Of a stretch of 64,000 nucleotides of DNA, positions 1-59,319 are shown piece after piece (position 1 is the stretch's first letter; each line of letters starts with the position of its first letter). Below the pieces are notes generated by a model, which worked only from the letters and a program-made list of their open reading frames with translations, was not told the origin of the DNA and did not search any database. The DNA comes from Epiperipatus broadwayi (Eukaryota > Animalia > Onychophora), in the NCBI GenBank assembly GCA_028023455.1, contig JAQFVV010000004.1:11966001-12030000 (forward strand). The letters run 5' to 3'. Made by a program: the position numbers and the translations under genes.

Positions 1-354
1 GGAGAAAGATTGATTTAATAACTAAATCTTTATTATTTGAAACTACCACTATTTAAAACTCTTGAGAAATATTCATTGAATTAAAATTGACTCCAATTTA
101 AACTTTGATTTTAATAATTTATACTAAAAACAAAATAAGTATAATAAAATATAAATAAAAGACAAAAAGTTAAAATTAAAATTGAAATATGATAAAATAA
201 GTATACAAAGGGCATTAATTAAATTAAAAATTAATTAATATAGATAAGCTTTACTGACTTGTGATAACTAAAGTCTTTTATGTTTATGAAATTGTTATTT
301 TTCACAATAAGTAAAATTCACATGATCACCATCTCTTATGCTAGCACATAACTG

Positions 355-487
355 TTATTAAACAGGCAAAGCTCTCCATACAGTAGTGCCACCCTGTTCC
401 AAACAAAGCAAGCCTTCTGGCATCCATTGATTACTCTGGTTGGCACAGGGTGGCACTACTGTATGGAGAGTTTTGCCTGTTTAATAA
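355..487. mobile_element. Short fold-back fragment of HHR family A (3' part only, no ribozyme core)
   Basis: Arms ttattaaacaggcaaagctctccatacagtagtgccaccctgt / acagggtggcactactgtatggagagttttgcctgtttaataa. The interior caagccttctggcatccattgattac recurs at ~28007-28032. Confidence 0.75.
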
Positions 488-5130: not shown

Positions 5131-5487
5131 TCTTATGATATTTTATTAATAGTTAAACTGGCAAAAAAATTATATACTAAATAAATCATTGTTATTTACA
5201 AAACTATTTTTCAATACCAAGTTAGTTCTTAAAATTTAATTAATTAATTTTAATAATAATGTACAGTTAGTTTTTTGCTTATTAAATCTTTAAGTGCTTA
5301 TCATGCAAAAAAAAATGCTAACCTGGTAGAAGTTATGTTTCCAAGGTCAATCCAGTTCACAATTTTATTATTAAGATTTTAGATTTAAATGTTATTATTA
5401 AACGTGATTTCAGAATTACATATAAATCAGAAAAAAATTACAATTACAGATGAATAGAAAAAATATTACATTGTGGGTAGATAATAT

Positions 5488-6509
5488 ATGCAATTTATCC
5501 ACTCTACTTTGAACACTTTTTAGAAAAAAAAACCTTTTATTGTACATATAATGTGTGCACAATCTTATGTTTCGACTGTCCTGCAGTCTTCTTCAGAGCT
5601 ATAATATAATGAACAAAATAAAATACATAACTATATAAGTAATGCCATAAAAATGTAAACAGTAAAATTAATAAAATAATAAAAAAAGACATAAAATATA
5701 ACAAAACATAATAAAAGTGAAATAAATATAATCAAACCCAAATAAAATAATCCAATTAATATAAAATAAAATATACAATGTAAATATAAAATGCATATAA
5801 ATTATACATGTATATTCCTGACTTATATACATACATATTCATGAACAACTATTAATTTAAGTATATTATTCATTTTTATTATTTTTAATAATCTCCTAAT
5901 TACTTCTATTCCTTATAAACTTAAATTTTAGTTTTATTAGCTGCACCTTAATAAAATACTTAATAATTTTATTTTCATATAATTATCAGTTCAACCTTAA
6001 CTCATTTATTAATATTCTTTTAGATTTTCATATCATATAATATCTATTTTTTTTTTATTCATTCTTCTGTTAAAACTAAAGTTTAAGTTTATAAGAAATA
6101 GACGTAATTAGATTATTAAAAATAATAAAAAATGAATAATATACTTAAATTAATAGTTGTTCATGAATATGTATAGATACAGTCAGGAATATACATGTAT
6201 AATTTATATGTATTTTATATTTATATTGTATATTTCATTTTATATTAACTGGGTTATTTTATTTTGGTTTGTTTATATTTATTTAAGTTTTATTATGTTT
6301 TGTTATATTTTATATTTTTTTTTTATTATTTTAATTAATGTTACTGTTTACATTTTTATGATATTATTTATATAGTTATGTATTTTATTTTGTTCATTAT
6401 ATCATAGCTCCGAAGAAGACTGCAGGACAGCCAAAACATGATTGTATATACATATATGTACAATAAAAGATGTTTTGTTTAAAAAGTATTCTGAGTGGAT
6501 AAATTGCAT
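5488..6509. mobile_element. ~1 kb fold-back element (arms ~5488-5936 and ~6071-6509) with an outward-pointing HHR core
   Basis: The arms are reverse complements. Minus strand 5569-5596 reads CTGAAGA-A-GACTG cagga CAGTC-GAAAC; the right arm has the decayed copy ccgaagaagactgcaggacagccaaaac. Confidence 0.8.
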
Positions 6510-8386
6510 TTATAAAAGATATTATAACAAAATAAAGTGGTGAATTTGATAATATTTCTAGATAATTTATGAAACTCAATCATGATATGGCAGTATTATT
6601 ATTCTAGTGATAAAATAAAATGTGACTACATAGAAATCATCTTTTTTTATTTGATAAATAGATTGGTATTGATACAAGAAAGTGGGCATTTTTGTCAGGT
6701 TATTTTAAGTGATTCTTTGCCCATATTTTAATTTTTGGTTGCAAAATATTGTGAAAGTCCAACACAAAATTGGAAACTTACTTAAAACATTGTGATGATG
6801 TGTCTAAAATTAAACATATGTATGCTCTCAAATACAATGTTAAATATCCCAATAGTCTTATATTGCCCTATTTTTTTTTACTTTTCTAATACAAAATGAT
6901 AAAAAAAATATTAGCGACAATTTATTACTTACATATGTACACAACTATATTATTGATCCCAAACTTAGAATCTTCTCAATGATTTTAAAAGACTCTCTGA
7001 CAGGCAACTTTATAATTAGGATTATTATGATTTTTTTTATATTGTTGAATATTAAAAACATTATGTAGGACTTTTTTTTCTAAATATCACCTTCCAATAA
7101 TGTTTGTGTATTTAATGAGTAGCTCAAGACACATTTTCCTTTTTCCAATGTGTCTCAGAGATGCCCAAAGATTGAACACCCCTGATTTAGAAATACTAAA
7201 TTGTACTTAAACTTTCTTCTACATAGCTAGTAAATAAAAAATAATGCTTTTATTCACATATATGATCTAAGAAGTAAAAAAAGGCAATATAAAAAAATAT
7301 TACAATAATGTAGAACTAATTTAAATTGGTGTAGTTTTAAATATTGTACTATTAAAACGGTGTAAAATACCAGTAAACTACCACTGACCACGATTAAATG
7401 TGTTATCGCTAAATTGTAGTACTCTATTGAGAAGTTATATCAATATGATTCCGACAAAAAGCATACATATAACAAGTAAATTAGTAAAAGTTTTTTTTTT
7501 TTTTGTAAACACCAATATATAGATATTAATGAAAATCATAAAACAATTATTAAAAGAGAAAATGCAAATTAGACAAAATTAAAAAATAAACTTTAACATT
7601 TTAATCTTATTAATTTTAAAATAAATTTTTTATTATTAATTTGTTTTTGCATTCAAAGAAAAAGATATTAAAAATAAACAAAGTTATTGTGTAAATATTT
7701 AAAATGCTTTGTGTTATTTTAAACTTATTCTTTTCATTAAAACCTTTTCACTGCAATAAATAAAACATGCAATAAACAAAAAACATTTTACAATTTAAAT
7801 TTAAAAAAAAAATCCTTTATTCAGAAGAATATGTTTAATGGAACAGAATACATATTTTATTAGTATCACTATAATTTATAATACTTTACACTTTGTATGA
7901 CTCAAATATGATGCAAGCATTCTATCTTTCACAACGTTTAATTAATTTATTCTAATATTTTTATGTTTTGTGAACTAATTATGTTTGTCTCTCAATACAT
8001 TTGAACTATTCCATTTAGTTATAAAACAGAAGAATAAATATAGTTAAAAAATTAGTTTACTAACAAATTTGCACACATACACACACATATATAGTATTAT
8101 TGGCTCAAACTAATTCTAACATCTTACAGAGTAATCAAAAATTGAATTTCCTGAGAAATGAACAGTGTCTATCTTTATTTATTGCTAACGAAGAAAAACT
8201 AACACGTATAGTGTATGCATATAGAAGTAAACAAGCCTTAATAATTACAGGAGAGCAAAGCTTTTCCAAATTCTGGTCAAAACAATAGTACAAGAGGAGG
8301 AAAATACTCATTAGAATATGCATGGATCAAAATTTTAAAAGTTTTTTTTTTTTACATAATTTTATCCTCTAGATTAATACTAAGTT

Positions 8387-23936: not shown

Positions 23937-24108
23937 AATATATAAACCATTATACAATTACAAATATCCAATAACGCCCTCTGTTTAATAGTCTATATCT
24001 CAATAATAGCGCTAGTCTATATCTCAATAATAGCGCTATTATTGAGATATAGACTATTAAACAGAGGGCGTTACTGGATATTTGTAGTTGTATAATGGTT
24101 TATATATT
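23937..24108. repeat. Spacerless palindrome with a 24-bp internal tandem duplication
   Basis: ~74-bp arms with 2 mismatches, centred on tagc|gcta. gctagtctatatctcaataatagc is duplicated. Confidence 0.92.
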
Positions 24109-24502
24109 TGTATGATTATTTTAGTGTTAATAGTAACTTTGTTTTCCTATATATAATGTATACAGAAATTATTTATATATACAAAGTAAAAGTAATGTTT
24201 ATTTACATTTTTAATCATTTGGATTCACAATGAGGAAAAAATCTTCTGCAATAACTAACTAAATTACATTGAACTGTTTATTAAATTGTCATATTATTAT
24301 TAATAAAATACATTTATATACTATATATATATAATATTTATTAAAATATGTTATAGATGAAATACACAGGCTTATATATATACCTGTGTCTATATATGTA
24401 ATAGACAGGGTATGAGCACAGACTTTCACATGACCCACTCTCCACACAATCTCATAACACTGATACACCTGAACACACATATGTCGAATAGATAAATAAT
24501 CA

Positions 24503-24543
24503 CCAATATACGTATTTCTGCTAAACCAGCAATCATCAGTTGG
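24503..24543 (-). ncRNA. Minimal type-I hammerhead ribozyme (family B)
   Basis: ccaa-CUGAUGA-U-UGCU gguuu AGCA-GAAA-U acgu AU-A-uugg: stem I ccaa/uugg, palindromic AUACGUAU stem III, AUA cleavage triplet. Confidence 0.8.
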
Positions 24544-24965
24544 TCCAGATTACCATCTCTACACATATATGCTACAAGTGCTCAGATATATATTAAGATA
24601 GCAAATCCTCCTACTTTAATGGACAGGCTTCTATGCACTCCACACTCCAACTCTTCAACCGTCCATCCAATTGAAAATCCGATGATGGAACGCTCAAAGG
24701 CCACCCTTAGGCTGAGATTGTTGTCACACCCATGTTGACCTAAAGGTCAATCTGTCCCCTCATGTACAGGACATAATCCATTATACAAAGGATAGGCAGA
24801 CATCTCTAATATGTAATAGATGAAATACACAGGCTTATATATATACCTGTGTCTATATATGTAATAGTCAGGGTATGAGCACAGACTTTCACATGACCCA
24901 CTCTCCACACCACCTTATAACACTGATACACCTGAACACACATATGTCAAAAAGATAAATAATCA

Positions 24966-25007
24966 CCAATATACGTATTTCATGCTAAACCAGCAATCAT
25001 CAGTTGG
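24966..25007 (-). ncRNA. Minimal type-I hammerhead ribozyme (family B)
   Basis: ccaa-CUGAUGA-UUGCU gguuu AGCAU-GAAA-U acgu AU-A-uugg. Confidence 0.8.
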
Positions 25008-25099
25008 TCCAGATTACCATCTCTACACATATATGCTACAAGTGTTCAGATATATATTAAGATAGTTATGTGATTTACTATACATATCTTTTAATGTAT

Positions 25100-26620: not shown

Positions 26621-27699
26621 CAGTGGAAGAACTGGAAGTATGCAAGATATTCATCACTAAAACAATCTGTGTCTTTTAAAAATATTATATAAAGGTTTGG
26701 TGACTCTCCTTTATTTCCAAAGCTGCAATACTGTACTTAAAAAGATTTACAATGTAGCCACAGGGATTATTTAATTCATGGATTCATTTTTACTTAAGTG
26801 AAATGGAATTCACTGCCACACAATCATCATTAAAAAAACACTTTTCTACGTATTAATGGATTTAAACACTTGTGTTGTAAATTACACATAAATAATAACC
26901 AGAAAAATATAGCAATATTTTTTTCTAAATGTAACATGTTAACTTTGGATTTTTTATTTGGTGTTTATAAATTATTGTACACACTAAAATAAATACGTTT
27001 TAATAGTAATATTTTCAGATATAATTTGTCCTTTTTATACCATCATTTTAAATAAATTTCTTAGATATGTTTAAAATGAATTACCTAATAATAAAATTTT
27101 ATGATCTAAATATTTGGATATGAATGTTTATCAGTTTTACCAGAACCCATCACCATAATAATCAAGCATACAACCTGAGAACAAAATATTCCTGAATTTT
27201 ATTTTAAATTTGGAAAATTTTTTAAGCTTTCTTAGCAATTGTAACATTTAATCAGTTACTGGAAAATTAGTGTTATTTCCCCCATACTCACATGGTAATA
27301 AATCTGTTTCTCATCATTATTCAATTAATGCATTATTTATTTTATTTGAATTATAAAAATCACTCATTATTGCTTCAACATTGACAAGTAATATATATGA
27401 CAAAAATCTATTAAAATGTTTTGAGCTTTTCCAAAACTTTTGATAAAATTTATGTATTATCAAAAGCATTATTTAATAAATTTTCTTTCATATGACATTC
27501 TATCTCAATTTTGCAAATAAGTATCACTTTCTTCTGACTTCTGTTCTAGTTAGTGTGGAAGAGATTTAATTATAAATCTTTTTTGTTAAACAGATTGTTA
27601 TTCATGATTGTAGTCTATTTTTTTCTTGTTTGATTTTTCATATAAATAGATACCCTGTGCCAATAAACATTACACAATCAGAATTTCTTATGCTTGTTT

Positions 27700-28075
27700 A
27701 TAACTGTTATTAAAACAGGCAAAACTCTCTATACGTATTACCACTCAATGCAAGCCAGAGTAATCAATCGATGCCAGAAGACTTGTGCATAAAATCCCCA
27801 TCTAGTACCTACTCATCCAATATCCCCAGACTAGTTTCTGATCATGTTGCCTTCATCAGTGAGAGAAATATCCTCAAACTAGTTTTTGGTTTGTTGCCTT
27901 CATCAGTGAGGGTTGCAGCTAATGCAACCCTCACTGATGAAAGCTACAAGCCAGAAACTAGTCAGAGGATATTGGACGAGTAGCACCAGATGGGGATTTT
28001 ATGCGCAAGCCTTCTGGCATCCATTGATTACTTTGGCTTGCACTGAGTGCCAATACATATAGAGATTTTTTTAGT
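27700..28075. mobile_element. Fold-back element of HHR family A, three HHR copies (two in tandem in the left arm)
   Basis: Centre cagtgagggttgca gctaa tgcaaccctcactg. The left arm has a 47-bp tandem duplication (catcagtgag at 27854 and 27901). Arms are homologous to 355-487. Confidence 0.85.
27929..27968 (+). ncRNA. Minimal type-I hammerhead ribozyme (family A, slightly decayed)
   Basis: cctca-CUGAUGA-aagc uacaa gcca-GAAAC-ua-GUC-agagg: palindromic ACUAGU stem III and GUC triplet. Consensus of the three copies gives GGC/GCC stem II and ccuca/ugagg stem I. Confidence 0.7.
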
Positions 28076-31514: not shown

Positions 31515-31764
31515 AATACACGCCTTAGTATTCATTATTTCAGGATTAGCATTTCTGGCCAAAATTTAATATTTTTTCTTGTTTATTAAAAAAAATAGCT
31601 ATAACTACAGAGCAGTTCTATTTAAAGTAATATATATTATATAAAATATTGTTGTACTGATCTGTTTTATTACTTTTTTACTCTAGATGGCAAGAAAATG
31701 CTTATAAGTTTTAACCCTCAATGCAGTTTTCTTGAAGGTTAGTAATGATAGTATTTTAGTTGTA

Positions 31765-32045
31765 TTTATATATTGAACTATTTAAATCATTTAATACTAA
31801 GTACTGAATGTCTTTAGAAAAATTAAACTTTATTTAAATTTTTCAACTATATTCAACTGTTAATAATAGCACACAGATTAGTATATGCACATCATTTCAA
31901 GAGGTATTATTCTTTATTCTCCTCTCTTATTCACGTGTTGCTAGCCTGTCTAGTGACAATACTAGCATGGGAATTGACCTTGGATCCTTAGATTATTTAA
32001 AATAGAATTGTAAGTTAGCAATCAAACCAACTGAGCCATCCTGCC
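31765..32045 (-). mobile_element. Old tRNA-headed SINE with AT-rich body (copy 1)
   Basis: Minus strand starts ggcaggatggctcagttgg (A-box) and has ggtcaattccc (decayed B-box). Aligns over ~280 bp with 32534-32810. Confidence 0.65.
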
Positions 32046-32079
32046 AAAGGTAACAGTGATTATACATAATGTATGGAAA

Positions 32080-32382: not shown

Positions 32383-32533
32383 ATAATGTATGGAAACCAT
32401 TAATCAATTTTTATTAATGGTTTCATAGTGTGACTATGGGAACCACTAATTAAATTTGCTCTCAGAAAAAAACAAAAAAATCAGGCAGAACCTCATAGAT
32501 AAGTATGAGACATTTCTACTGCCTGTTATCTTT

Positions 32534-32810
32534 AGCAGGATAGTTTAGTTGATTAAAATGTTACCTTAAAATTCAATATTCAAGAATCTAAGGGTCCAAA
32601 GTTTGATTTCCTTGCTAGTACTGTCACTATCTAGGCCATCAACAGCTAAAGAAGAAAGGAAAATAATATCTCTCAAAATATTGTGCATATAATAACCCAT
32701 GTTCTATTACTAACAGTTAAATGTAATTGAAAATTTTAAATAAAGTTTAATTTTTCTAAATATATTCAATACTTAATATTAGATGATAGAAATAGTTCAA
32801 TATATAAATT
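32534..32810 (+). mobile_element. Old tRNA-headed SINE (copy 2, inverted relative to copy 1)
   Basis: gcaggatagtttagttg...tgctagtactgtcact...ttttaaataaagtttaatttttctaaa is the reverse complement of copy 1, with substitutions. Confidence 0.65.
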
Positions 32811-33489
32811 CAATGCAGTTTTGTGTATTAAAATAGTTAATGCTGGTAATATAATATTATTTTCCACAAATAAGGGTTTGAAGGTTAAACCTTATGCAAG
32901 ATATTTTAAATCCACTGGAAATATACTTTTACACTTAACTTGAAGAATCTATACAAGATGTAAAATTTGGTGATTCAAAAAAGTGTTTTTTAAAAACAAG
33001 TATGCAGATTAAGAAAAAAATGAAAGATTTATACAACTACAGATTTAACACAAATAACTAAATACATTATTAGAAAATTACTAGATAATATAAGCATTAT
33101 TGCTGGAAATAATTACATCTTTTATTTATTTAATGAAGATGGCTATGGCCAATGTTTGTTATCATTTATATAAATTTGCAAATAAGCATATATAAAACTA
33201 AAAGCATGATAAATATCAATCTAAGTGATGATACATCACTAAAAAAAAAATTCTTAGTACAAGAATTCCTTTTGCAGTTCAGTATCAAAACCGATCAATA
33301 TAAAAATGTAGATAAATAAAAAAACGTAATGAGAACAAAATTAATATGATTTGTCCAGAATAATCTAGAAAAAATAAATACTTCTAAATATTAATTATTA
33401 ACAAAAAAATGTTAAAATAAATATTATTATAATATATTACAAATAAGGATATCAAGAAGATCGAGTCTCATTTTTGTTTTATTTAAATT

Positions 33490-33690: not shown

Positions 33691-35930
33691 ATTGCCTGAT
33701 TACTAAAATAATTTTCAAGCCAAGGAATAAAAAATAAATAAATATGAAAACGCATAAATACAAATAATTTTCTTTACGAGATATAAAGTCAAAGGCCGTA
33801 GATTTAGTCTAAATAAATAGCAACAATTTTGAGATCACTATCCAGTAATGATGACAAATTGTTAATTATACTTATAAAATGCATCTAATGTATTTGTAAC
33901 ATCATCATCATCATTATTATTTAATTTTAACTTAAGTTAATTTTATTTAAAGTTCAAAATAATAATTAATAGTCAATTACAGAATGCACTTTTTTTATAA
34001 AAAAAAAAGACAAACAATTACAATTGACACAATGATAAAAAGGTGTGGAGAAAAGAAAGAAATGAAAGTTGTACATATTAATTAAATTCTAGATGATATT
34101 ATTAAGCATACAATCCCTGTTGTAATGGTTGATCATATAAAATATAGGACATAACCTGAAAGCATGAGATTGATAGGGAATTAGATTAAATGAATTATGA
34201 GCTAGTATAATATATAAAGATGAGAATATATATATATATGAAAGCAAATTTGACATAATTGTAAATTAAGAGGTAATATTATATAAAAAAGTAATGTTTC
34301 TGATTTTTCTTCTATGTTTCAAGAAAGAATTAAAATGTGCATTAAAGTGATTAATTATGTTTTGAGTATCTAGCAAATACAAATTTAATTTTTTGGATAT
34401 TTCTTTTAATATATGGATTCCAGATAACTAAAACAAATTCTAAGATGGGGAGAATTAAAGAAAGGAAAAGTTTATATTTAGTTGACTGATTAAATATTTT
34501 ATCTTGTTTAGGTGTGGTCCTGTAGTATTAATATGTAGAAGGAAGTAAACATCACTGGAAAAAGTAATTTCAAGATCTTTCTGATTATATTTAAAATGAT
34601 TTTAAAATCATAGACACAATAGGAAAATTAAAATTTTAGATTTCTTTTGGAGTAGAAGACAACATAGTATTTTTTATTAGTCAAAATTTTGTTGCCACTG
34701 CCCCATGTTATAAACAGATCTATAACATTTTATAGTAAAGAGCAATCAAAAAATGAATCAATGCATATGAAAATTTTGCAATTATCAGCATAAAAGAAAA
34801 GGTGAAAATATTTTAAACTACTCCTAAAATTATTAATATATTTATATGGAAATCAAATTTATTGTAAATGTGGCAAAGGAAGATTAATTTATAGTTCAAA
34901 TATCAAATTGTATTTTGGTAAGACAGCAGACCAAGTTAAATATAATAAAATAGATTACCTTTCAGAATTTTTATTTAAAACATTAGTAAATTAAAAAATA
35001 ATTTAAATACTGTCTAGATTTTAAATGAAATCCATGCAGGATATATTAGAAAATGAAAATTTTACATAAAATAATTTGGAGATCAGAAATAAAATTTGTA
35101 TTACATTTTTACATTATCAAAACTAATTACTCTGAAAATGATTTGATATCTTTAATCTGTAATTAAGCTTTGTTTTACATCTTATTCCTTTATTATAAAT
35201 TTTTATTTTATTTTAAAAATAGAAATTTCCAACAATAACTTTTCTTATAATTATGATAGAATTCTTTATAAAAAAAAACATTTTTAGTATAAATAGTATA
35301 TAACAGAAATCAATTGGTCTCTTTTTCTTCTCTGATTTTCTTGCACATCATATTAATTGTCAGTATAGATGTTACCATCAAAGTAATGTTCAATTAACAA
35401 AAACCTCCTCAAAGCACTAAGAAGCTATTCTTACAGTGTTAATTTGTACCTAGGAACTCCTTCCTCAGTGTACAGAACCAGTTATATTGAAACAGTCTCA
35501 GTGGCATCTAATTAATTATAATCCAATCAATCACTTGCCATATTTATAGAAACTTATATTAATAAACTAGTAATGATTTCAAATATGTGTGAAAAACTGA
35601 TGATGATAAACTGCATATTTTGAATATGTGTACAAAACCTGATATTGACAAAATGTATAAACTCAATATAGAAAAACCCAAGATCTGGCAACATCAATTT
35701 ATAACTACTGAATATCAAATAGTGCTTTTTTTTGTGAGTTTTCCTGTAAACCAAGACAACAGCCATATTTTTTGATAAATGTCCACTTTCAAAGACCTAT
35801 AATTTACTGAAGATGTGTTAATTGTTAAATTAAAACAAAATTAATAGATTGGTTATTAAAATTTAAAAAAATGAATGAATTTTGATAAATTTCATTAAGA
35901 AGCTTTATTTAATTTTTTTTTACTTATATT

Positions 35931-36453
35931 TATGCGGGGTTCGAACTCAGACTTTCACACAACCCACCACTCTCAGTGCCATCTCATATTGCTGACCCAC
36001 CTGATCACACACATGTTGAAAAGATAAATAATCACCAATATACGTATTTCATGCTAAACCAGCAATCATCAGTTGGTCTAGATTACTATCCTCACACACA
36101 CACATATATATAATCAGTACTCAGCTTTATATTAAGATAGCCAATCTTCATACTTTAATGGATAGGCTTCAAACTATTCCAACTCACAACTCTTTAGCCT
36201 TCCATTTCATTGAAAATCTGATGATGGAACGTTCAAAGCCCTTGATAGTGTCAAAGTTGTCATCCTACCCATGTTGACATATTAGTCATTCTGACCCCTC
36301 ATGTACAGGAGAATAACCCATTTATATATACATATGCGAGGGATGGGCAGACCTTTTACACACTATTTATATAAATTAATACATTGTACAGGCTTAAACC
36401 TGCATTTATATATGTAATATATGCGGGGTTCTTTAAGCCAGTACAATGTATTA
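35931..36453 (-). mobile_element. Family B HHR element, one full unit (period 489 bp), 13-bp TSD, fold-back 5' end
   Basis: TSD ttttacttatatt at 35918-35930 and 36454-36466; the empty site is visible in the 52.8 kb MITE copy. tatgcggggttc occurs at 35931 and 36420. 36435-36453 is the inverse of 36377-36395. Confidence 0.9.
36035..36076 (-). ncRNA. Minimal type-I hammerhead ribozyme (family B)
   Basis: Identical to the 24966-25007 motif. Confidence 0.8.
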
Positions 36454-39400
36454 TTTTACTTATATTATAAAGTGGGTGGTGATGAGATTCGTTTAACACT
36501 GTCTTACATTAGTGCAATTCATCATGCTTTTTTTTATCAGCAGTTTTTTTGGTAAATTGTCATAATAATAAAACAGAACGTGATGCAATGAATTATTTCC
36601 AAAGGTGTGGGATTCTACCCTCCTGAAAAGTGTGTGTTAATGGTCATTATATGATTACATGCAGCCAACATAAATAAAGTGTAAATATTGTTTTTTTTTT
36701 TCTTTTCATTTTTCTGTTAATAAGTTAATCTGAAAAAAAAAAAAGAAACTGTAAATATTGTAATTAATTTTTTCACAATGATTTTTTTAAAATAATAAAA
36801 AATAAAATGTTAACATTAATTACATTTCCTATGAGGTATTTCTTTGTAACTCCCCCCCCCCCCCCCGAAACTGTAGATTTATCAAAAAATATGGGCTGCC
36901 ATCTTAGTTTACAGGAAAACTCTTAATTACAAAAAAAAAAAAAAACTAGGTAAAGATGGACTTTGCTGACTGCTGAATAAAATAATAAGGTAAGGTAATT
37001 GTATCAAAGTCATTTTTAATGTATAACCATTTTACAACTTTATTTAAATTTTAAAGTGAACTTTCTTTTTGCCTAAAGTCTCATATTATTATTTATTTCT
37101 TCATCTAATTCTTGGTTAACATTTTTTTTATTATTATTCATTTTGAATTAACATTATTATGTAAATTATATTTAATGAATTCAATTCTATTATATTTTGA
37201 GATTTTGGAATGGCAAAGTGAGGTGTGTAAGAGCTAAACTTCACAGCTAATTGTTCATTTTAATGTGTTTAATAAGAATCAATAGTTTAGCAGCTATAAA
37301 TCCTCCTCCTTATGCTTAGTTAAATTATTAATGTTTGAAAGATAAGCTAATTTATACAAAACTGGACTAAAAATAAATTGGAATATACAAATCAATGGGA
37401 ATTATTATTCGAAATTGATATTTATGAATACTATCGGATTTTAAATATTTTATTAGAACCAATATTAAAAAGAAAAAGAAAACTAAGGGATTTAGCGATA
37501 GCCTGTTGAAACTAAAGCTGAAATGTGCTTTTGTTTTATTACTTTGAGTAGACTTGATTCATTAATTAAAAGTTTTGAAACTGATTCTAGTTATAGTACA
37601 ATATATATATGTTGTAGATTCATTTATATACATATAAGATATTGACGTTGTTATACAAAGTAATGTACGTTCAAATTTTATGTACCTTATTCTAACATAT
37701 ATTTTGAGCACACTTTCACTTTATTGATGATTCACTCTTCCAGTCTTTAGATTTTGAAATAAATTTTTATTAGATTTAGTAATAATATATGTTACTATAT
37801 CTTTTGAACGCATTTAATTATTGATTTTTACAACGATGCTCGTCTGGTTCCTTATGAATAGGTATTGTTAAGAATATTAAAAATGTGCAATATTCATAAA
37901 AGTGACTATTTTAAGCTTTCTTAATTAAAGTCTGTGCTAGCATTATTGCTAAATAATAAGTTCTGATATAATATATACATGTGTATACTTACCGATCTTA
38001 GTTTTAATATGCATAACTAATTAATTTTTTAAATAAAACGACTAATATTATGAATAGACTATTTCAATTTTGTCCATAATAACATCCAGATATATATATA
38101 TTATTTATGTGTATACATGACATAAAGTTATAGAATTTTAATTCCTTGACATAATTTTATTTTATAAAGATTAAATACATTTTAATTTATCCAAGTTGAT
38201 TTTAAAATAATAACTAAGAATATTTATGGTGAATATTATAATATTGCTTTAATAATGAATGAATTTATAATACATTTTTGATACTTGTTTGTTTTAATAT
38301 GATCTCTTTTTAGTAATCATTACTGTTACTGTACCATCATATGCTATGGCCAACTGAATATTTCAAGAAGTCTCTAGGATTTCCATAATCTATTGGACAT
38401 AGGTTAAATTGCTAGTAGTGATTGAAGGTTTTATATGAATCTATGGTTATATGTCACTCACCATTAAATTGTAATTTTCCTATATAAATATCAGTATTTA
38501 AACACCCAATGAAGGCTAAATATTAAATTTTACCTATCATAAATAGGAGTAAAAAATTCTAGATGGTAAATCTAATGGTATCATCTGATCATGGATGTTG
38601 GTCATAATCCTGCACAGGAAGCTATGCTGCCGCCCCCACCGCCATCACCACCACTATTATTATTATTATTATTTTTAACAAAAGCAGTTCAATAATGTAT
38701 GAATGATTTAAACTATTTAATGAAATAATTTGAAAGAACTAAAATAATTTTGCTAGAAGAATATTATGATCAGTTTTGTCAAAGGCTTTAAGTAAGTCAA
38801 AATAAGTGACATCATGCCTGCTCTAAAAATTTTTATGGCATGAACAATGTAATCAGAGAGGATAAAGAGATTGGTTTCAATTGAATTATTGGGTTAAAAA
38901 CATACTGATTTGCAAATTTACTAATATCTAAGATAATTTTTGTCACAAGTATTATCATTCAATTATTTTAGCAAATGTATGTAAGATTGAAATAGATCTA
39001 TAATTGCAAGTTAATTTTTTAAAGCCATTTTTATAACAAAAAAAATCTTTGCCATTTTCAGGATTGTAGAGAAGTTGGCATTTTTTTTATAAGATAATTA
39101 AAAATATGACATAGACAAGAGGCAATAAATTTGAATATTCTTCACATATGAAAGAAAAAATTTATCTGGACCTAAAATAGAATCTAATGTGAACTTTTTA
39201 ATGAAGATATGATATCAGATTCAAAAAGGGAACCAATGGTTATTTTTTATATAGAAGAAATATTGAAAATATTAGATGTGTAATGACATTGAATTAGATT
39301 GGTGATCTCAAAAAAATATTTAGCAAAATTATCTATCTTCAAAATAGGGTTAATATAATGCTGTATTTCCCTTTAAATTAATCCAAAGTCTTTAATTAGG

Positions 39401-41109
39401 TACCAGAATTTTTTGGAACTATATGAAATATTTAACTCCACGTTTTATATTATTTTTTTCATAATCTGCCTTGTAAAAGATTTTGGATAAAATCTTTTAA
39501 AATTAATAAAGTTATTATAAAAAAAACATTTTTTGTTCTGAGATATTGTCTAAAATGATATGTTTTTTTTTAATTCTAAAAGACTTACTGAGAACTGAAG
39601 ATGAAAATGATTGAGATAATTTTTGGCAGAATATAAGAATTGAATAGGTTATCAACTGCAAATATAATAAAATTTAATATCAAAATTAACACCAGAAAAA
39701 TTGTAGAGAAGATTCCAAACAAATCTCTACTTCTGTAATTCCTTCTAGTAAATCAAAAGGAAATAAACTTAGAGCAGTGAATTTTTACATGAAATTCAAT
39801 TCAGAGAATGATGGAGATCTTAGAAAAGAGTAAAAGAAAAAAGTTATAAAATTACAATTGCAAAAAAATGCAATCTAATGTTTGGTGTTTACAATTGGTA
39901 ATAGCATTATATTGTATGAGGTTTAATAAATTAATGAATTACAACATCCTAGAGGCTTTTAAGATTAGAACTGGAGAGATAGGGTTACCAAAATACAGAG
40001 TAAGAATATTAAAGTCACCAATAATAATGATGTGGAAGTCATGTGAAATTAAAAAAAATCATCAAAGGAATATAATAGTTCATTCAATTCAGACAGGAAA
40101 GATATTAAGTGTTATGTATGTACAGTCTAAAATAATTTTGTAGCTACTATTTAATATGACTTCTTACTAAGTAGATTTACATAAATGAGAAAGCACAGAG
40201 ATGGATTTACATGCCAAATTTTGTTTAATTGCTATAAGTGTATCATCACTTCTGGAACCAATTTATGTAAATCTATGACAATACAAACTTATAATTATTA
40301 TCCCCCCCCCCCTTTCACTGTTAATAAAACTTATAATTTATTATCTATCAATATTTGATTCTTTATATTATTGTAAGCCATGTTCCAGACATAAATATAA
40401 AATTCAAAATTTTCTGTTATTCATAATAGATTTTTTTAAAAAAAAGATTGAGATTACAAAAAAAAAACAAAAAAAACAGAAACTTAAACAAAAAAATAAA
40501 AAAGTATAGAGTGGAACAGGTATAATAAGAAGTGAAAAAAATGGAAGATATTAAACAAAAAAATAGTTAAAAAAGAAGCTAAAAAATATTATGCTGTTAG
40601 TCTTAATATATTGAATAAATCACCATTAAAAAGACAATTGATGTATCATGAGAAATTAAATCCCAATGTTGGATGAGGTATAAAAATGTAAAAAGGTGTA
40701 AGATTTGATGTTATTTTGTAACATATAACTGCTGTTTTTAAACTATTCACCAGACATTTTTTTTTAAGTCAAATGATTTAGTATTAGGAGGGTAATTGGA
40801 GACAAGTTATCTATTACCTTTGTTTCTAGTATTAAATAAAAGCAGACTATATTTAGGGGTCCTGCTGTAACTTGAAGGACTTTTAAAAGATTGAGAATGA
40901 ACATTTTTCTGAGATTTACTGAAATTAAAATTTTTATCTAAATATATCTGATTATACCAAGATAGGAGAATATCATAATGATTTTTGACACAGGTAGTAA
41001 TTAATATGATGATGTGATATAAAATCAGACTTATATCTAGTAAATAGTCAAAATAAGAGTCATAGATCAATTCATAGATCACATGACCCTATCTCTTAAG
41101 CTTGTAAGT

Positions 41110-41190
41110 TATAAACAGTGAGGATTGCCAATTCCTCTACAAGCTTTATCATAAAGCTTGTAGAGGAATTGGCAATCCTCACTGTTTATA
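41110..41190. repeat. Perfect palindrome, 40-bp arms and 1-nt spacer
   Basis: tataaacagtgaggattgccaattcctctacaagctttat c ataaagcttgtagaggaattggcaatcctcactgtttata. Confidence 0.95.
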
Positions 41191-43344: not shown

Positions 43345-43515
43345 TTACACATGTGTGTGGGAGATGATCTGGACTAACTGATGAGTGCTGGTTCAGCACG
43401 AAATACGTATAGTGGAGATCATTTATCTTTTTCACATGTGTGGTTATGTGTATCAGTTGTATGAGATAGAATGGATAGCTAAAAAGAATTTGAAAATCTG
43501 TGTTCAAATCCCCTA
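43345..43515 (+). mobile_element. Family B HHR element, truncated; HHR at 43374-43415
   Basis: CUGAUGA-GUGCUG guu CAGCAC-GAAA-U acgu AU-A, with a canonical G-C closing pair of stem II. Stem I is weakened (cuaa/gugg). Confidence 0.85.
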
Positions 43516-45557: not shown

Positions 45558-45893
45558 GCACTTTCTTTCATTCTACCATATAGAAGATGTTTACCTTATA
45601 ATACAAAATCATCTATGCACTTTATTACTGTTACACAATGCTTTACAGTTTACAGTTTTGATTGCCTCAACAATCTTCTCCAGAACTTTTATGTCTCCTA
45701 ATTTTAACTGCTAAATTCAAATTCAAATTTAGCAGTTGAAGTTAGGAGATACAAAAGTTCTGAAGAAGATTGCTGGGGCAATCGAAACTGTAAACCATAA
45801 AAGAGGGTGGTAAATAAAGCATTGTGTAACAGTAGTAAAGTGAATGGATGATTTAATATTATATGGTATACATTTGGCAATACAATAAGAAAG
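45558..45893. mobile_element. Fold-back element with intact HHR core at 45757-45795
   Basis: Arms meet at ctgctaaatt caaattca aatttagcag. Right arm reads gtt-CTGAAGA-A-GATTGC tggg GCAATC-GAAAC-t-GTA-aac. Outer boundaries approximate. Confidence 0.8.
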
Positions 45894-46449
45894 AGTAGTT
45901 AATATACTTCTTGTAGATGTTTAACATGAGCAAACTTTATCTGGAAAATAAATTTCAATGAATATCAAACCTTTTCTATTATGTAAATTATATTCCTTGA
46001 CTAAATCTGTGAAACCAACTATATTATATATTTTATCACTACAATTTTCTTGCATTTATACATAAAAAGTTACCATAACTACAAGGCTTCTTGTTTCATC
46101 AAAATTACATTCAGTCTCAGGTCTGAAATTGACTAATTAGTATTTTATTCTAGATTATAATGATAACAAATATTTTCCAAAATAGTTATTGCAGAATTTT
46201 TTCTGTATTTTCTCTAAGATCTTTTTCTCATTCTATCTTCAATTTATTATATTATTTCACTATATTCAATAACATTTGCACAAGACCCAATTATAATAAT
46301 TCTTTCATTATCAATAATTTCCTTGTATTAATTTTAACTTGGGATTGTGTGTTTGTGTAACCATATTTCTAACCTTTAATTTCATGCTCAGCAATTCTGA
46401 ACTGAAATCTTATATATATATAAGCATTTATATTTAGAAAGTATTTATT

Positions 46450-46739
46450 TCACTAGATGAAGCTTACCAATAGCTCTGATCAAGCTTTATTTTATAAGTG
46501 CCAAAAGAGAAAGAATTCAAAATCTCTATCGTAAATCCCTATCTCCAGACCAATTGGTTTCAAGCTTGTGGCTTATCTCGGTGGAGCACTGGGACTCTAG
46601 CACTCCACTGAGGTGAGCCACAAGCTCGAAACCAATTGGTCTGGAGAAAGGGATTTACGATAGAGATTTTTAATTCTTTCTCTTTCGGCATGTATAAAAT
46701 AAAGCTTGATTAGAGCTATTGGCAAGCTCCATCTAGTGA
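46450..46739. mobile_element. Fold-back element with HHR-topology motif at 46603-46646
   Basis: ~135-bp arms with a ~16-nt spacer. ctcca-CTGAGGT-GAGC cacaa GCTC-GAAAC caattg GTC-tggag has stems I, II and III all perfect, but position 9 is U instead of A. Confidence 0.85.
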
Positions 46740-47249
46740 TCATAAAATGCAAGCTTAAAAGAAAGTTATGAAATTTATAACTTGTTTTAATTATTAAAGT
46801 ATTTATTTGTATATACATTTATATTGAGAAAGTACTTATCTGTATTAGCTTGACTAATATCAAGATCTCATTTAGCTTCTGAATTAAAATTCCAAAATTA
46901 CTACTTTCACTTTACATAGCTAACGTTCAAATGATTTTAGACATTGGTCTCTGTTGTAGTATAATTTATTCTCTAAAACGACATTGATTCAGATAACCAA
47001 TCACTCATGTATGTTTGAAAAAAATGTATTCATAGAAGTATTTTTAGTTCTAAAGTAAATTGTATTGGTTATACAGAATGAAGTATATTACATGTAATTG
47101 TAAATACAGATAATTGTTATATAAGTAATTTCAATACAATTCGAATATAAAATGAAAAAAAATAGAAAAAGTACATCGTATTTAAAATATAAAATATTTA
47201 GTGCTAAAATATTACTATTATATTTAATTAAACAAAAAAGAAAAAATGA

Positions 47250-52782: not shown

Positions 52783-53456
52783 ACTTGTGAGTTTTCCTGT
52801 AAATCAAGATGGCAGCCTGTATTTTTGATAAATATACAGTTTCAAGGGCCTACAATCTACTAAAGATATGTTAGTTGTTAAATTAAAACAAAATTAATAA
52901 ATCTATTGTTAAATTTAAAAAAAAATGAATAAATTTCAATAATTTCATTAAAAAGCTTTATTTCAATTTTTTTTTACTTACATTATAATGTGGGAAGCGA
53001 TGAGACGCTCTTAACATTGCCGTACTTTGGTTCAATTTAGGATGTTTATTTTTGTCAGCAGTTTTTTCTTTTGGTAAATTGTCATAATAAAAAAAAATTG
53101 GGACTTTCCTGTCACAGAATGTGATGCAATAGACTATTTCCAATGGTACAGGATCCTACCCTTTTGAAAAGTGTGTGTGTTTATGGTCATTATATGATTG
53201 TGTGCTGCTGTTATGAATAAAGTATAAATATTGTATTTTTTTTTTTGCATTTTTCTGTTAATAAGTTAATCCAAAAAAATGTCAATAAACTATAAATATT
53301 GTAATTATTTTTTCCACAATGATTTCTTTTTTAAAAAATGATAGCAAATAAAAAATAAAATGTAAATATGACGTTTCCTAATAGGCATTTTTTGTAAACT
53401 GCACATTTATCAAAAATATGGGCTGCCATCTTGGTTTTTTTGGAAAACTCACAAGT
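52783..53456. mobile_element. MITE family C, uninterrupted copy (~674 bp)
   Basis: ~50-bp TIRs acttgtgagttttcc..caagatggcagcc..tttttgataaat. No ORF; TSD not resolved. Confidence 0.9.
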
Positions 53457-56400: not shown

Positions 56401-57054
56401 CCAGAACACGAGCAAGTCCATGGTGTGATAATACTAATATAACTTTCCAGTTTATATAAATGCTGTTCCTCAACTGAGATCCTTGATTCAGTCAAAATAA
56501 TGCCATAGAAACAAAATGGAAAATCACAAATAAATAATTAAATCATCAAAATGTGAAGTAAACTATGAATATTCAGCTGAAAAATATTAAAATCATTTTT
56601 ACAAATATGAAATAAATTAGACCATTCACATGGACATAAATTTCACAAAGACAATAAATCAGCTTCATTCTTAATTAAAATTCAGGGTAAATTGAAATCA
56701 TTTCTCATGTAAAAGAAACCATTGTAAATAAATGCTATTCCCTTCTGCTCCCATATTTTTTGCTGTTTTGTTAACTTCTAATGACAAAATATCAAATACA
56801 GATATAACAGTTTTTCTCTTAAGTCAAAATGATCTTGCCAAATTATAGGAAGCAAAATGAACAACTACAAGTCCTGGTTTTTCAGAATTACTTTTTGTAT
56901 GAATATTTTTTTCTATATCATTTCTAAAAAAATTTCCAACCTCAAGTTTTATTCCTATTTTGAAATAATTTTTGGCAAATCTTGGACTATCTTGTAATTT
57001 GATTTCATTATCCATTTGATGCCTTTCCGAAGTTTCAATACTATTCTTCAAACA

Positions 57055-59319
57055 TTAATAGACAGGCTTCAATCTATTCCAACCTCCAACTTTTCAGCCA
57101 TCCATATCATTGAAAATCTGATGATGAAAACCCAAATCTCATACTGATGCCATGTGGATAGATAGGAGGTGCTTGAGAATCTCTGAGTTCAAATCCCCTA
57201 TATTTACAATTAAGCTCCAGGTTTCTGAAGAGTGCCTGGTTTTCAAATATTTACACATCAAGCTTGTATCCTGCCCATCCCTCTTCTATGTATTTATATG
57301 GATAAGGTCCTATACATGAGGAGTTAGAATGACTTGAAGTCAACATGGGCATGGCAATAATATTGGCATCACCATGGGATTTGGATTTTCATCATCAGAT
57401 TTTAAATGATATGGATGGCTGAAAAGTTGGAAGTTGGAGTAGATTGAAGCCTGTCCATTAAAGTATGATTTGCTATCTTAATATATATATATATTGTACC
57501 ATTTATTTATATATATGGTACAAATTACTATTTAATATTGCGTATCATTTAAATAAAAAAAGAGAGAACCCGATCTTTAATTTTTTTTTGTAATATAATG
57601 TTGTTTTAAGAAAAACGTACAGTGAAAGTTTAATTTTTCTTTTTTAATATAAGTTAACTAAAATAAATTCAATGTTGGAAAGTGCATACTGAATAATTGA
57701 TTCAAATAGTGAAAGGAAATTTCAAAGGTAAAAGATTGCTATCAGAAACAACTTCCTGATAGTAATTAAAAATGGCAGAAATTCATAACGAGAAAAGAGA
57801 CTTTGTAATAAAAAATGAGGAATAATGTAGAAGTTTTGAATATGCGCAGAACTTCGAAAAAGAATCTGGGGATATAAAAGGGGCCGACAGGTTTCAAAGG
57901 TGTCTTTTTGTCTTATTGTTCTAGAGTATTGAGCAATTTGAAGTGCCACATATTTTTTTTATACAAAAAAAAAATATTAATAAAATGTGTCCACTTGGAT
58001 ACGAACTGAAATCGCTTGCCATGAGTGAGTAGAACTCTATCATTTGCCGACACTTTCTCTCGAGAAAAGTCACCTAGATCATCGTCTGTCTCTACCTAAA
58101 TTTGACCGGAGATTTGGAAGAAGTAAAATTAAAAAAAAAAACAGCTACTGCGGACTACCCACTGACTGAATTGGATGTCGGAGGATCAATGACCTACTTA
58201 AGTACCAACTTATCGGTAAGTTAATGGCCATAACTTTTACATAAAGCTTTATGAATAGATATTTGAATGAAATGTTATCCCTTAATTTTTTTTGATTGAA
58301 AGATTTGTGAACTGAGAAGTGAACGAAACTGTTACCATGGAAAAATAAGACACCAACTAGTTATTACTTCAATATTTGAATCAAATTATTAAATTCATAT
58401 GCGCAATACTTTCCAATATTATAATTTTGTCTTAATCATAAATATTAAATGTTTGATGGACTAGAATAAATCTTTATTATTAGCTTAACTTTCATTGTAC
58501 GTGTATAAAATTAATGTTATTATATTTAAGTTTTATATTTAGTTATTGAAATTCAAATTAGTATACAAATTACCTTTGCTAAATAGATTTATTTTTCTTA
58601 ATTAAGTCAAAGGGGAATATCTTCTACTTAATGGGAATTTTAATCCAGATCGTATAATTATTACTTTATGAGTTACAATATGTTTGATGCAGACTCAGTG
58701 GGTCTAACGACTCTGGCACCCTCATGTAGAAATTAAAAACTGATTCAGCTCACAATTATACTCGGGTAATAATTCTAGGCTGGGCTGATCAGGAAAGATA
58801 GTTATGTTTTTAGAATAATAATGAAACGTTCTTCTTTTTTTGAAATAAAATAAATAAACATTTATTTTCCTTTTACATAACTTGATCAACTCGCGCATTT
58901 ATAATGTGTATAGAGGCCTAGAAATACGGAAAACGTTACAATATATATATGGGAGATGATAATCTGGACCAACTGATGAGTGCTGGTGTAGCATGAAATA
59001 CACATATATTGGTGATTATTTATTTTTTGCTACATGTGTGTAGTCATGTGTATCAGTTGCATGAGATAGTGTGGATAGATGGAGGTACTTGAAAATCTGA
59101 GTTCAAATCCTTTATATTTACAATTAAGCTCTAGGTTTGTGAAGAGTGTCTGGTTTTCAAATATTTACATATCAAGCTTGTATCCTGCCCATCCCTCTTC
59201 TATGTATTTAAATGGATAAGTCCTACACATGAGGGATTAGAGTGACTTGAAGTCAACATGGGCATGGCAATAATATTGGCATTAGCATGGGGTTTGGGTT
59301 TTCATCAGATTTTCAATGA
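57055..59319 (+). mobile_element. Family B HHR element (~1.4 units plus inverted 5' piece) inserted in the LINE, 13-bp TSD; HHR at 58969-59012
   Basis: TSD tattcttcaaaca (57042-57054) / tattcttccaaca (59320-59332). 57055-57140 is the inverse of ~57372-57460. gtggataga occurs at 57154 and 59071, a period of 467 bp after removing the nested insert. Confidence 0.85.
57495..58940 (+). mobile_element. Probable solo LTR (1446 bp) inserted into the (TA)n of the family B element
   Basis: TGTA...TACA termini with atat on both sides. TATAAAAG at 57873, AATAAA near 58845-58857, CpG-rich interior. Family B sequence is continuous across it. Confidence 0.55.

What the first reader, a model, noticed from the sequence alone, without database searches (positions are those of the whole stretch)
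36377..36453. Fold-back 5' ends on family B copies link them to the palindromic elements
Seen: the 5' end of this copy (36435-36453) is an inverted copy of 36377-36395, and the 57 kb copy starts with an ~85-bp inversion of its own interior. The same head-to-head geometry, with the HHR or 3' end pointing outward, holds for the fold-backs at 355, 5488, 27700, 32080, 45558 and 46450. Known: PLE insertions often carry inverted terminal repeats. Inference: one enzyme system makes them all, perhaps by nascent cDNA folding back and self-priming.
Basis: partly seen in the sequence, partly recalled or inferred. Interest (0 to 1): 0.75.

Follow-up and report, generated by a model that had tools for sequence, protein, structure and literature searches.

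The report
Penelope-type two-armed retroelement insertion
The small hairpin at one end of this repeat is a second, 22-letter inverted copy of the repeat's own tail, which is the already described way Penelope-like jumping genes and their ribozyme-carrying passengers insert, so the pattern is real but largely known.

Summary
Window 36432-36453 is the reverse complement of 36377-36398 (21 of 22 bases, 33-nt loop). It lies inside a 12-13-bp target-site duplication whose empty site survives at 52969-52984.

It is probably not a random fold-back. The 22 nt end exactly at the family's canonical "tail" terminus (T2), and the 501-nt main arm ends at the tail-less terminus (T1).

Across five hammerhead-bearing families here and the GIY-YIG (Penelope) ORF copies, I counted about 95 adjacent inverted pairs. 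All are head-to-head with 3' ends outward; none is tail-to-tail. Target-site duplications vary from 7 to 15 bp and flank the whole two-armed unit. In family B, 16 of 17 two-armed copies with two canonical ends carry exactly one tail.

This is the published Penelope-like element architecture: an inverted 5'-truncated copy plus a 30-40-bp tail at one end. Self-priming was already proposed for it in 2013. Cleavage and extension of both target strands from two adjacent start sites was shown in vitro in 2024.

Simple cDNA snap-back is geometrically impossible for 6 of 22 family B copies, though it fits some copies of other families.

Verdict: a new member of a known kind, of modest interest.

The parts
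35918..35930 (.). Left copy of the target-site duplication TTTTACTTATAT(T)
   Evidence: Three-way alignment with the empty site at 52930-53020; BLAST of the flanks
35931..36431 (-). Main arm of the family B insertion (one 490-nt unit plus 12 nt). The sense strand is minus. The 3' end at 35931 is the tail-less terminus T1 (...GAGTTCGAACCCCGCATA).
   Evidence: The same T1 end recurs in loci L004, L015, L019, L022, L025.
36432..36453 (+). Short inverted arm: unit positions 35-56, the last 22 nt of the tail. It ends at the canonical tail terminus T2 (...GTACAATGTATTA) directly against the TSD.
   Evidence: The T2 end recurs in about 25 arms of other loci.
36377..36398 (-). Internal copy of the same tail segment in the main arm, the partner of the apparent hairpin
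36454..36466 (.). Right copy of the target-site duplication
36034..36077 (-). Type I hammerhead of family B: ACCAA-CUGAUGA-UUGCUGGUUUAGCAU-GAAA-UACGUAUA|UUGGU. It has a short helix III with a palindromic loop.
   Evidence: Descriptor scan. The core is conserved in 55 of 56 units of other loci. Rfam does not detect it.
35938..35948 (-). tRNA-like B-box motif GAGTTCGAACC just upstream of T1
   Evidence: Read from the sequence. ARAGORN finds no tRNA.
52969..52984 (.). Empty (uninterrupted) paralogous target site
57048..57152 (-). Inverted arm of the 57-kb family B2 copy, the reverse complement of 57364-57468. The whole insertion is flanked by ATTCTTC(A/C)AAC at 57034-57044 and 59316-59326. Both of its termini are non-canonical.
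57153..59319 (+). Main arm of the B2 copy, interrupted by a ~1.45-kb insertion at about 57490-58935
5484..6560 (.). Family P1 two-armed insertion. The left arm (minus sense) ends tail-less at 5484. The right arm (plus sense) carries the tail at 6514-6560. Hammerhead core at 5570-5596 (minus).
27683..28070 (.). Family C (P4) two-armed insertion. The left arm has the tail (27683-27720) and the right arm ends tail-less at 28070.
319..485 (.). Family C (P6) two-armed insertion, both arms 5'-truncated, tail on the left arm only. TSD AAGTAAAATT at 309-318 and 486-495.
45587..45913 (.). Family P3 two-armed copy. Tail at 45874-45913 on the right arm only. Hammerhead core CUGAAGA...GAAA at 45760-45787 (plus).
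46450..46789 (.). Family P2 two-armed copy. Tail at 46740-46789 on the right arm only. The hammerhead-like motif is non-canonical.

Best explanation
Window 35931-36453 is one retrotransposition event of a non-coding, hammerhead-bearing, tandem-unit element (family B, 490-nt unit, more than 3000 candidate copies). It was mobilised in trans by Penelope-like element (PLE) RT/GIY-YIG endonuclease. PLE insertions characteristically comprise two cDNAs whose 5' ends meet and whose 3' ends face the two ends of the target.

Most likely each cut strand of the target primed reverse transcription at one of two adjacent start sites on the element RNA. These are T1 (...CCCCGCATA) and T2 (...ATGTATTA), 45 nt further 3'; the stretch between them is the 'tail'. 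In this copy the T1-primed cDNA ran 501 nt. The T2-primed cDNA stopped after 22 nt, still inside the tail. The two were joined head-to-head and filled in, leaving a 12-13-bp target duplication.

The hairpin appears only because the main arm, being just over one unit long, contains the same tail segment 33 nt from the junction.

Shown: the anatomy, the TSD and empty site, the canonical termini, the orientation bias, the one-tail rule, and abundant PLE ORFs in this genome. Inferred: that PLE proteins did it, and that the short arm is a second target-primed cDNA and not a snap-back.
For: 1. TSD and empty site bracket both arms.
2. In the genome, family B forms tandem units with constant 3' ends and variable 5' ends.
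3. All 23 two-armed family B insertions are head-to-head.
4. TSDs flank the whole two-armed unit in L004, L011 and L014.
5. Of 17 two-armed copies with two canonical ends, 16 are T1+T2, 1 is T1+T1 and 0 are T2+T2. Single-armed copies are 13 T2 to 3 T1. If the two ends were independent, the chance of this is below 1e-6.
6. Six of 22 two-armed copies (L007, L008, L024, L025, C316, C282) have a T2 arm that reaches through a tail lying beyond the other arm's T1 end. Neither arm can be a copy of the other (coordinates).
7. Another copy (C22:8152289-8152883) has a 61-nt arm that is exactly the tail, next to a long T1 arm. Family C has a 38-nt tail-only arm (C6420).
8. In non-tandem families, short arms are anchored at the 3' terminus. 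P1 short arms cover query 45-111, 45-186, 53-234, 45-248 and 49-267. Family C short arms cover 4-41, 4-80, 4-82, 4-89 and 4-118.
9. All six two-armed insertions in the window carry exactly one tail.
10. There are more than 10,000 GIY-YIG candidates, with open frames up to 901 aa. Neighbouring pairs are 20 in (-,+) order against 0 in (+,-) order.
11. Literature: an inverted 5'-truncated copy and a 30-40-bp tail at one end (PMC8557442; PMC3846280). PLE protein cleaves and extends both strands, and RT starts at two adjacent sites that bound the tail (PMC11167929). PLE hammerheads have a short palindromic helix III and occur on opposite strands 100-700 bp apart (PMC4209133). Animal retrozymes are proposed to be non-autonomous PLE derivatives (bioRxiv 10.64898/2026.07.22.740005).
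Against: 1. No autonomous PLE sharing family B's 3' end was found in the 20 GIY-YIG loci I could read, and I could fetch no more DNA.
2. For this copy alone the data do not separate the models. The geometry is also what a 33-nt-loop snap-back would give.
3. Three of the four shortest family B arms (window, C22, C12832) have apparent loops under 60 nt, against about 12% expected each if inner ends were independent.
4. One family B copy is T1+T1 (C12832). Family C has several T2+T2 copies. Two of 18 P2 copies have tails on both sides. The one-tail rule is therefore not absolute.
5. The 57-kb copy has non-canonical termini on both arms.
6. Rfam does not recognise the hammerhead. The young subfamily has U.U at positions 10.1/11.1.
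7. Each search scored only the 40 best candidates, so counts are samples, not a census.
Confidence: 0.6

Rival explanations
1. cDNA snap-back (the reader's model; self-priming was also proposed by Arkhipova et al. 2013). The first-strand cDNA, primed at T1, reached unit position 1. Its 3' end folded back over a 33-nt loop and copied 22 nt of itself. This end was then ligated to the upstream target end.
For: The geometry fits: stem 22 nt, loop 33 nt. Short-loop internal fold-backs with outer ends that are not at canonical termini exist. In family B2 these are C6306 (stem 25-83, loop 18), C6:17235997 (stem 68-125, loop 60) and a loop-less palindrome at C3:19143434-19144179. Six of 40 tRNA-SINE copies also show it. 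Three of the four shortest family B arms have loops under 60 nt. The literature proposes self-priming from palindromes at PLE inverted junctions (PMC3846280).
Against: The fold-back would have to stop exactly at T2 here. In other copies it would have to stop at whichever terminus the main arm did not use (16 of 17 mixed). Six of 22 family B copies are geometrically impossible by copying one arm from the other. In P1 and family C the short arms are anchored at the 3' terminus, which would need loops of hundreds of nt. A fold-back running to the end of a target-linked cDNA should invert the flank and not leave a direct TSD, yet direct TSDs are seen.
Confidence: 0.22
2. L1-style twin priming by a LINE enzyme. 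The second target strand primes internally on the same RNA, upstream of the first cDNA, giving a 5' inversion.
For: The TSD is TPRT-like.
Against: Twin priming inverts the 5' part without duplicating sequence present in the direct part. Here the inverted arm duplicates 3'-terminal sequence and is anchored at a canonical 3' terminus. The elements have no poly(A) or LINE-like tail. Instead they have the PLE tail, tandem units, hammerheads and AT/(TA)n targets.
Confidence: 0.04
3. DNA-level origin: terminal inverted repeats of a cut-and-paste or foldback transposon, replication-slippage inversions in a satellite, or assembly artefacts.
For: One family B junction in the assembly (L004) contains an Illumina adapter. 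P2 and P3 look like fixed palindromes when searched with the whole palindrome.
Against: TSDs vary from 7 to 15 bp. Inner junctions vary and single-armed copies predominate: 33 of 40 for P2 with a one-arm query, and most P1 and family C copies. The orientation bias is about 95 to 0. Termini are canonical. The window copy has an empty-site paralogue. P2 palindrome centres differ from copy to copy, and there are no fixed left-versus-right arm differences.
Confidence: 0.04

Closest known systems
Penelope-like element (PLE) insertion architecture: pseudo-LTRs, an adjacent inverted 5'-truncated copy, and a one-sided 30-40-bp tail (Evgen'ev & Arkhipova 2005; Arkhipova et al. 2013, PMC3846280; Craig et al. 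2021, PMC8557442)
   Same: Head-to-head inverted 5'-truncated arm. Partial tandems. A tail at one end only (about 45 nt here). Variable TSD around the whole unit. AT-rich or microsatellite targets. A hammerhead near the 3' end.
   Different: The elements here are short and non-coding (190-600 nt), not 3-4-kb ORF-bearing PLEs. No sequence link to a particular autonomous PLE was found.
In vitro PLE mechanism of Frangieh et al. 2024 (PMC11167929)
   Same: Two adjacent RT start sites bound the tail, matching T1 and T2. Both target strands are cleaved and extended. Targets are AT-rich.
   Different: That work did not follow completed insertions or inverted arms. The pairing of one T1 arm with one T2 arm per insertion is a genomic inference made here.
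Animal non-LTR retrozymes, tandem type I hammerhead repeats (Cervera & de la Pena 2014, PMC4209133; Li, Clavereau & Pollet 2026, bioRxiv 10.64898/2026.07.22.740005)
   Same: A tandem 490-nt unit. A type I hammerhead with a short palindromic helix III. Proposed dependence on PLE machinery.
   Different: Circular RNA was not tested. The young family B hammerhead has a U.U mismatch at 10.1/11.1. A tRNA-like B box lies next to the 3' terminus.
L1 twin priming (5' inversion)
   Same: The second target strand is used as a primer, and a head-to-head junction with microhomology results.
   Different: Twin priming starts internally and inverts upstream sequence. Here both arms start at defined 3'-terminal sites and duplicate the same sequence.

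Membership tests
PLE-mobilised non-autonomous element (PLE-type insertion) | Inverted 5'-truncated copy adjacent to the 5' end, head-to-head | tested here: met
   Window copy. 23 of 23 family B junctions are head-to-head. The same holds for P1 (12), family C (21), B2 (12) and P2 (7), with none tail-to-tail.
PLE-mobilised non-autonomous element (PLE-type insertion) | [quoted passage not shown] | tested here: met
   T2 lies 45 nt beyond T1. 16 of 17 two-armed family B copies carry one tail. All six two-armed insertions in the window carry one tail. Exceptions exist in family C and in 2 of 18 P2 copies.
PLE-mobilised non-autonomous element (PLE-type insertion) | Partial tandem (pseudo-LTR-like) organisation with 5' truncation | tested here: met
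   490-nt units lie head-to-tail, with variable 5' starts and constant 3' ends.
PLE-mobilised non-autonomous element (PLE-type insertion) | Variable-length TSD around the whole unit; AT-rich or microsatellite target | tested here: met
   TSDs of 7-15 bp. P2 inserts in (TA)n tracts.
PLE-mobilised non-autonomous element (PLE-type insertion) | Autonomous PLEs (RT plus GIY-YIG) present in the same genome | tested here: met
   PF01541 gives more than 10,000 candidates, 150 scored over the cut-off, with open frames up to 901 aa and the GIY-YIG domain C-terminal in L073. The RT domain was not scanned separately.
PLE-mobilised non-autonomous element (PLE-type insertion) | 3' end or pLTR sequence shared with an autonomous PLE | tested here: inconclusive
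   BLAST of the families against 20 GIY-YIG loci gave only adjacent or nested copies, no shared 3' end. No further DNA could be fetched.
Hammerhead ribozyme, type I, PLE/metazoan kind | CUGANGA and GAAA cores, helices I and II, short helix III with a palindromic loop | tested here: met
   The descriptor scan finds 36034-36077 (minus), 24965-25008 (minus) and 58968-59013 (plus). The core is conserved in 55 of 56 units. These features match PMC4209133.
Hammerhead ribozyme, type I, PLE/metazoan kind | Recognition by Rfam hammerhead covariance models; G10.1-C11.1 pair | tested here: not met
   No Rfam hit for family B even at E 10 on 581 nt. Positions 10.1/11.1 are U.U in the young subfamily. Self-cleavage was not tested.
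Non-LTR retrozyme | Circular RNA made by self-cleavage of tandem transcripts | not testable with these tools
   No RNA data are available.
L1-type twin priming | The inverted segment derives from RNA upstream of the junction, without duplication | tested here: not met
   The inverted arm duplicates 3'-terminal sequence that is also present in the direct arm.
TIR DNA transposon / MITE / foldback element | Fixed-length TSD and constant terminal inverted repeats in all copies | tested here: not met
   TSDs of 7-15 bp. Most copies of P1, P2 and family C are single-armed. Inner junctions vary.

The most novel reading that the evidence does not exclude
The near-strict pairing of one tail-bearing (T2) arm with one tail-less (T1) arm in each two-armed insertion is the genomic footprint of a coupled reaction. 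A PLE protein dimer would use the two adjacent start sites of a single RNA (or RNA dimer) once each, one per cleaved target strand. A trailing T2-primed cDNA blocked by the T1-primed hybrid would then give arms that consist only of the tail, such as the 22-nt arm here. Short elements with a fixed RNA 5' end (P2, P3) would become near-perfect palindromes anew at each such insertion. Their centres would then map the 5' end of the RNA.
Probability: 0.3. Interest if true: 0.55.

Novelty: new member of a known kind. Interest (0 to 1): 0.3.

Why it matters
The finding rediscovers the signature architecture of Penelope-like element insertions, in short ribozyme-carrying passengers of a 5.6-Gb animal genome that teems with PLEs.

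Its value is supportive. It gives insertion-level evidence (TSDs, tail, head-to-head arms) for the recent proposal that animal hammerhead repeats or 'retrozymes' ride on PLE enzymes.

It also gives a quantitative hint, one tail per two-armed insertion. This bears on the still unresolved question of how PLEs build inverted repeats: two coordinated target-primed cDNAs or self-priming.

For annotation, it means the many 'palindromic elements' here should be filed as PLE-type retroelements, not as MITEs or microRNA-like hairpins.

Tried and rejected
1. Rfam at gathering and at E-value thresholds gave no hammerhead except a weak HH9 hit. The many microRNA-precursor hits below gathering score simply reflect long hairpins and were discarded.
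2. ARAGORN on the family B copy found no tRNA.
3. I looked for an autonomous partner by BLASTing the families against 20 GIY-YIG loci. This gave only neighbouring or nested copies.
5. I compared the two arms of one locus with arms of different loci. Family B gave 95.9% against 95.5% identity and 33% against 15% shared variants. P2 gave 91.2% against 88.8%. This shows a common source but cannot separate the models.
6. Folding the T1-T2 region as RNA gave a small hairpin in the tail but z = -1.3, not significant.
7. I first thought P2 and P3 were hard-wired palindromic elements. A one-arm query showed that most P2 copies are single-armed, so I rejected that.
8. I first computed folded loop sizes and read them as uniform (note). 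Recomputing them with direction showed both impossible cases (against snap-back) and an excess of short loops among the shortest arms (for it). Both are reported.

Full report
**What is there**

The window is AT-rich (about 25% GC). It comes from a 5.6-Gb animal assembly (G000:C4:11966001-12030000).

At the finding, 36432-36453 is the reverse complement of 36377-36398 (21 of 22 bases) across a 33-nt loop. The repeat finder extends the arms to 34 nt at 85%. Hairpins of this strength occur at 8 places in the window and never in 20 composition-matched simulations.

The flanks of the copy belong to another repeat. An uninterrupted paralogue of that repeat lies at 52854-53095. A three-way alignment shows a 12-13-bp duplication, TTTTACTTATAT(T), at 35918-35930 and 36454-36466. 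The insertion is therefore 35931-36453, and the short inverted arm is its last 22 nt, inside the TSD.

**Orientation and nature of family B**

The minus strand carries a type I hammerhead: ACCAA-CUGAUGA-helix II-GAAA-UACGUAUA|UUGGU (36034-36077). Its short helix III and palindromic loop are typical of metazoan and PLE hammerheads (PMC4209133). Rfam does not detect it. The young subfamily has U.U at positions 10.1/11.1.

In the genome the family has more than 3000 candidate copies. The best are 93-97% identical to the window copy. They form head-to-tail arrays of a 490-nt unit.

In sense orientation the 3' ends are constant and the 5' ends vary. This is the mark of target-primed reverse transcription.

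**Two canonical 3' termini**

Arms end in one of two ways.
- T1 ends at ...GAGTTCGAACCCCGCATA, just after a tRNA-like B box.
- T2 ends 45 nt further, at ...GCCTGTACAATGTATTAAT.

Single-armed copies are 13 T2 and 3 T1, with TSDs directly abutting (for example L019, L022, L026, L028).

The window's main arm ends at T1. Its 22-nt arm is unit positions 35-56 and ends exactly at T2. So the 'fold-back' is an extremely 5'-truncated inverted copy anchored at a canonical 3' terminus.

**Two-armed insertions are the rule**

I reconstructed 23 two-armed family B insertions.
- All 23 are head-to-head.
- TSDs flank the whole two-armed unit: L004 AAACATTTTTA, L011 CAACTCTGTT, L014 about 12 bp.
- Of the 17 with two canonical ends, 16 are T1+T2, one is T1+T1 and none is T2+T2. 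If the ends were independent, with T2 at about 0.8, the probability is below 1e-6.
- Junction microhomology is 0-7 nt.

| Family (window position) | Usual form | Two-armed copies | Tail pattern |
|---|---|---|---|
| P1 (5484-6560) | ~600-nt unit, mostly single-armed | 12, all head-to-head; short arms anchored at the 3' end | At least 9 of 12 have one tail |
| C (P4 at 27683-28070; P6 at 319-485, TSD AAGTAAAATT) | ~180-nt unit, mostly single-armed | 21 head-to-head pairs; short arms anchored at the terminus, one just the 38-nt tail | Several T2+T2 copies |
| P2 (46450-46789) | ~190-nt unit that inserts in (TA)n with long TSDs | 7 of 40, each a full-length T1 arm plus a full-length T2 arm | One tail in 16 of 18 two-armed copies read in full |
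| P3 (45587-45913) | Not determined; only the whole palindrome was used as query | All 40 scored hits, with a constant centre | One-sided ~40-nt tail |

P2 two-armed copies look like constant palindromes. Their centres nevertheless differ from copy to copy, and there are no fixed differences between left and right arms.

All six two-armed insertions in the window carry exactly one tail.

At about 32 kb the situation differs. Two tRNA-SINE copies lie head-to-head 466 nt apart around an unrelated palindrome, and no hammerhead is present.

One tail-to-tail pair exists at 23614-23947 and 24353-25065. The two copies are 400 nt apart and look like separate insertions.

**The enzyme system**

PF01541 (GIY-YIG) finds more than 10,000 candidates, with open frames up to 901 aa and the domain C-terminal. 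Neighbouring GIY-YIG matches are 20 in (-,+) order, none in (+,-) order, and 6 in tandem. The autonomous PLEs here therefore show the same head-to-head bias.

The trans-mobilisation link is thus an inference from architecture.

**Comparison with the literature**

- Craig et al. [quoted passage not shown]
- Arkhipova et al. 2013 describe the same, with a 9-bp TSD around the whole insert. [quoted passage not shown]
- Frangieh et al. 2024 show in vitro that a PLE protein cleaves and extends both target strands. RT starts at two adjacent internal sites, and the tail is the sequence between them.
- A 2026 preprint argues that animal retrozymes are non-autonomous PLE derivatives.

What this window adds is another set of members.

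**Which sub-mechanism**

Against simple snap-back:
- Six of 22 family B copies (L007, L008, L024, L025, C316, C282) have a T2 arm that extends through a tail beyond the other arm's T1 end. Neither arm can be a copy of the other.
- The terminus of the supposed fold-back arm is always the type that the main arm did not use.
- Short arms in P1 and family C would need loops of hundreds of nt.
- Direct TSDs are present.

For snap-back as a minor route:
- Family B2 has copies with internal, short-loop inverted pieces whose outer ends are not at canonical termini, and one loop-less palindrome.
- Six of 40 SINE copies have 5' inverted duplications of internal sequence.
- Three of the four shortest family B arms have apparent loops under 60 nt.
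- The 57-kb copy has non-canonical termini on both arms.

Arm-to-arm identity does not discriminate between the models.

I therefore favour two coordinated target-primed cDNAs started at T1 and T2, at about 0.55-0.6 for this copy. Snap-back stands at about 0.2. PLE machinery overall stands at about 0.85.

**Caveats**

- Each genome search scored only the 40 best of thousands of candidates, so all counts are samples.
- Several pair counts were read from hit tables, not from sequence.
- The assembly has at least one adapter-containing palindrome centre (L004).

No contig looked human. The only consensus computed was a per-position majority of the non-coding 490-nt repeat, used to call variants.

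Noticed in passing
L004:1311-1331 (G000:C12455, about 1096745): An Illumina TruSeq adapter (AGATCGGAAGAGCACACGTCTGA) sits exactly between two inverted family B arms. It is an assembly artefact at a palindrome centre and a warning for palindromic junctions in this assembly.
   Followed up: partly
window 23614-25065: Family A copies (related to B) lie tail-to-tail: a plus copy ending near 23947 and a minus tandem ending near 24353, 400 nt apart. A 172-nt, 97% palindrome of another family (23937-24108) sits between them. This is the only pair seen that is not head-to-head, and it is probably two separate insertions.
   Followed up: partly
window 31760-32056 and 32523-32813; genome hits: This is a tRNA-derived SINE family. 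Six of 40 genome copies carry an inverted duplicate of an internal segment directly at a slightly truncated 5' end, with short loops. Three share the boundaries query 46/48-112/114. That is true snap-back geometry, or else an inherited subfamily structure.
   Followed up: partly
G000:C3:19143434-19144179; C6306:3314885-3315324; C6:17235997-17236438: Family B2 (more than 8000 candidates) includes a loop-less palindrome and two short-loop internal fold-backs whose outer ends are not at T1 or T2.
   Followed up: no
L069, L075, L078, L082: In 4 of 20 GIY-YIG loci a hammerhead-bearing non-autonomous element lies 3'-end to 3'-end within about 0-1.3 kb of the GIY-YIG fragment. This is possibly insertion into PLE tails, which the PLE endonuclease is reported to recognise.
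   Followed up: no
window 57490-58935: A ~1.45-kb insertion interrupts the B2 copy at its internal (TA)n tract. P2 copies likewise sit in (TA)n tracts, so (TA)n appears to be a preferred target.
   Followed up: no
window 36047-36072 against 43378-43403 and 58973-58998: The young family B hammerhead has U.U at positions 10.1/11.1 in nearly all of the 56 units read. Older relatives keep a standard pair there (G-C at 43378, G-U at 58973). The recently amplified subfamily may therefore not self-cleave.
   Followed up: partly
window 41107-41193 and 19286-19469: Two further hairpins were left unclassified: an 87-nt palindrome at 98% complementarity and a 184-nt one at 82-83%.
   Followed up: no
genome-wide: There are more than 10,000 GIY-YIG candidates and several uninterrupted 870-901-aa frames, some in 3.1-kb tandem arrays (C12394:20942626-20950119). 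PLEs may still be active in this animal.
   Followed up: no
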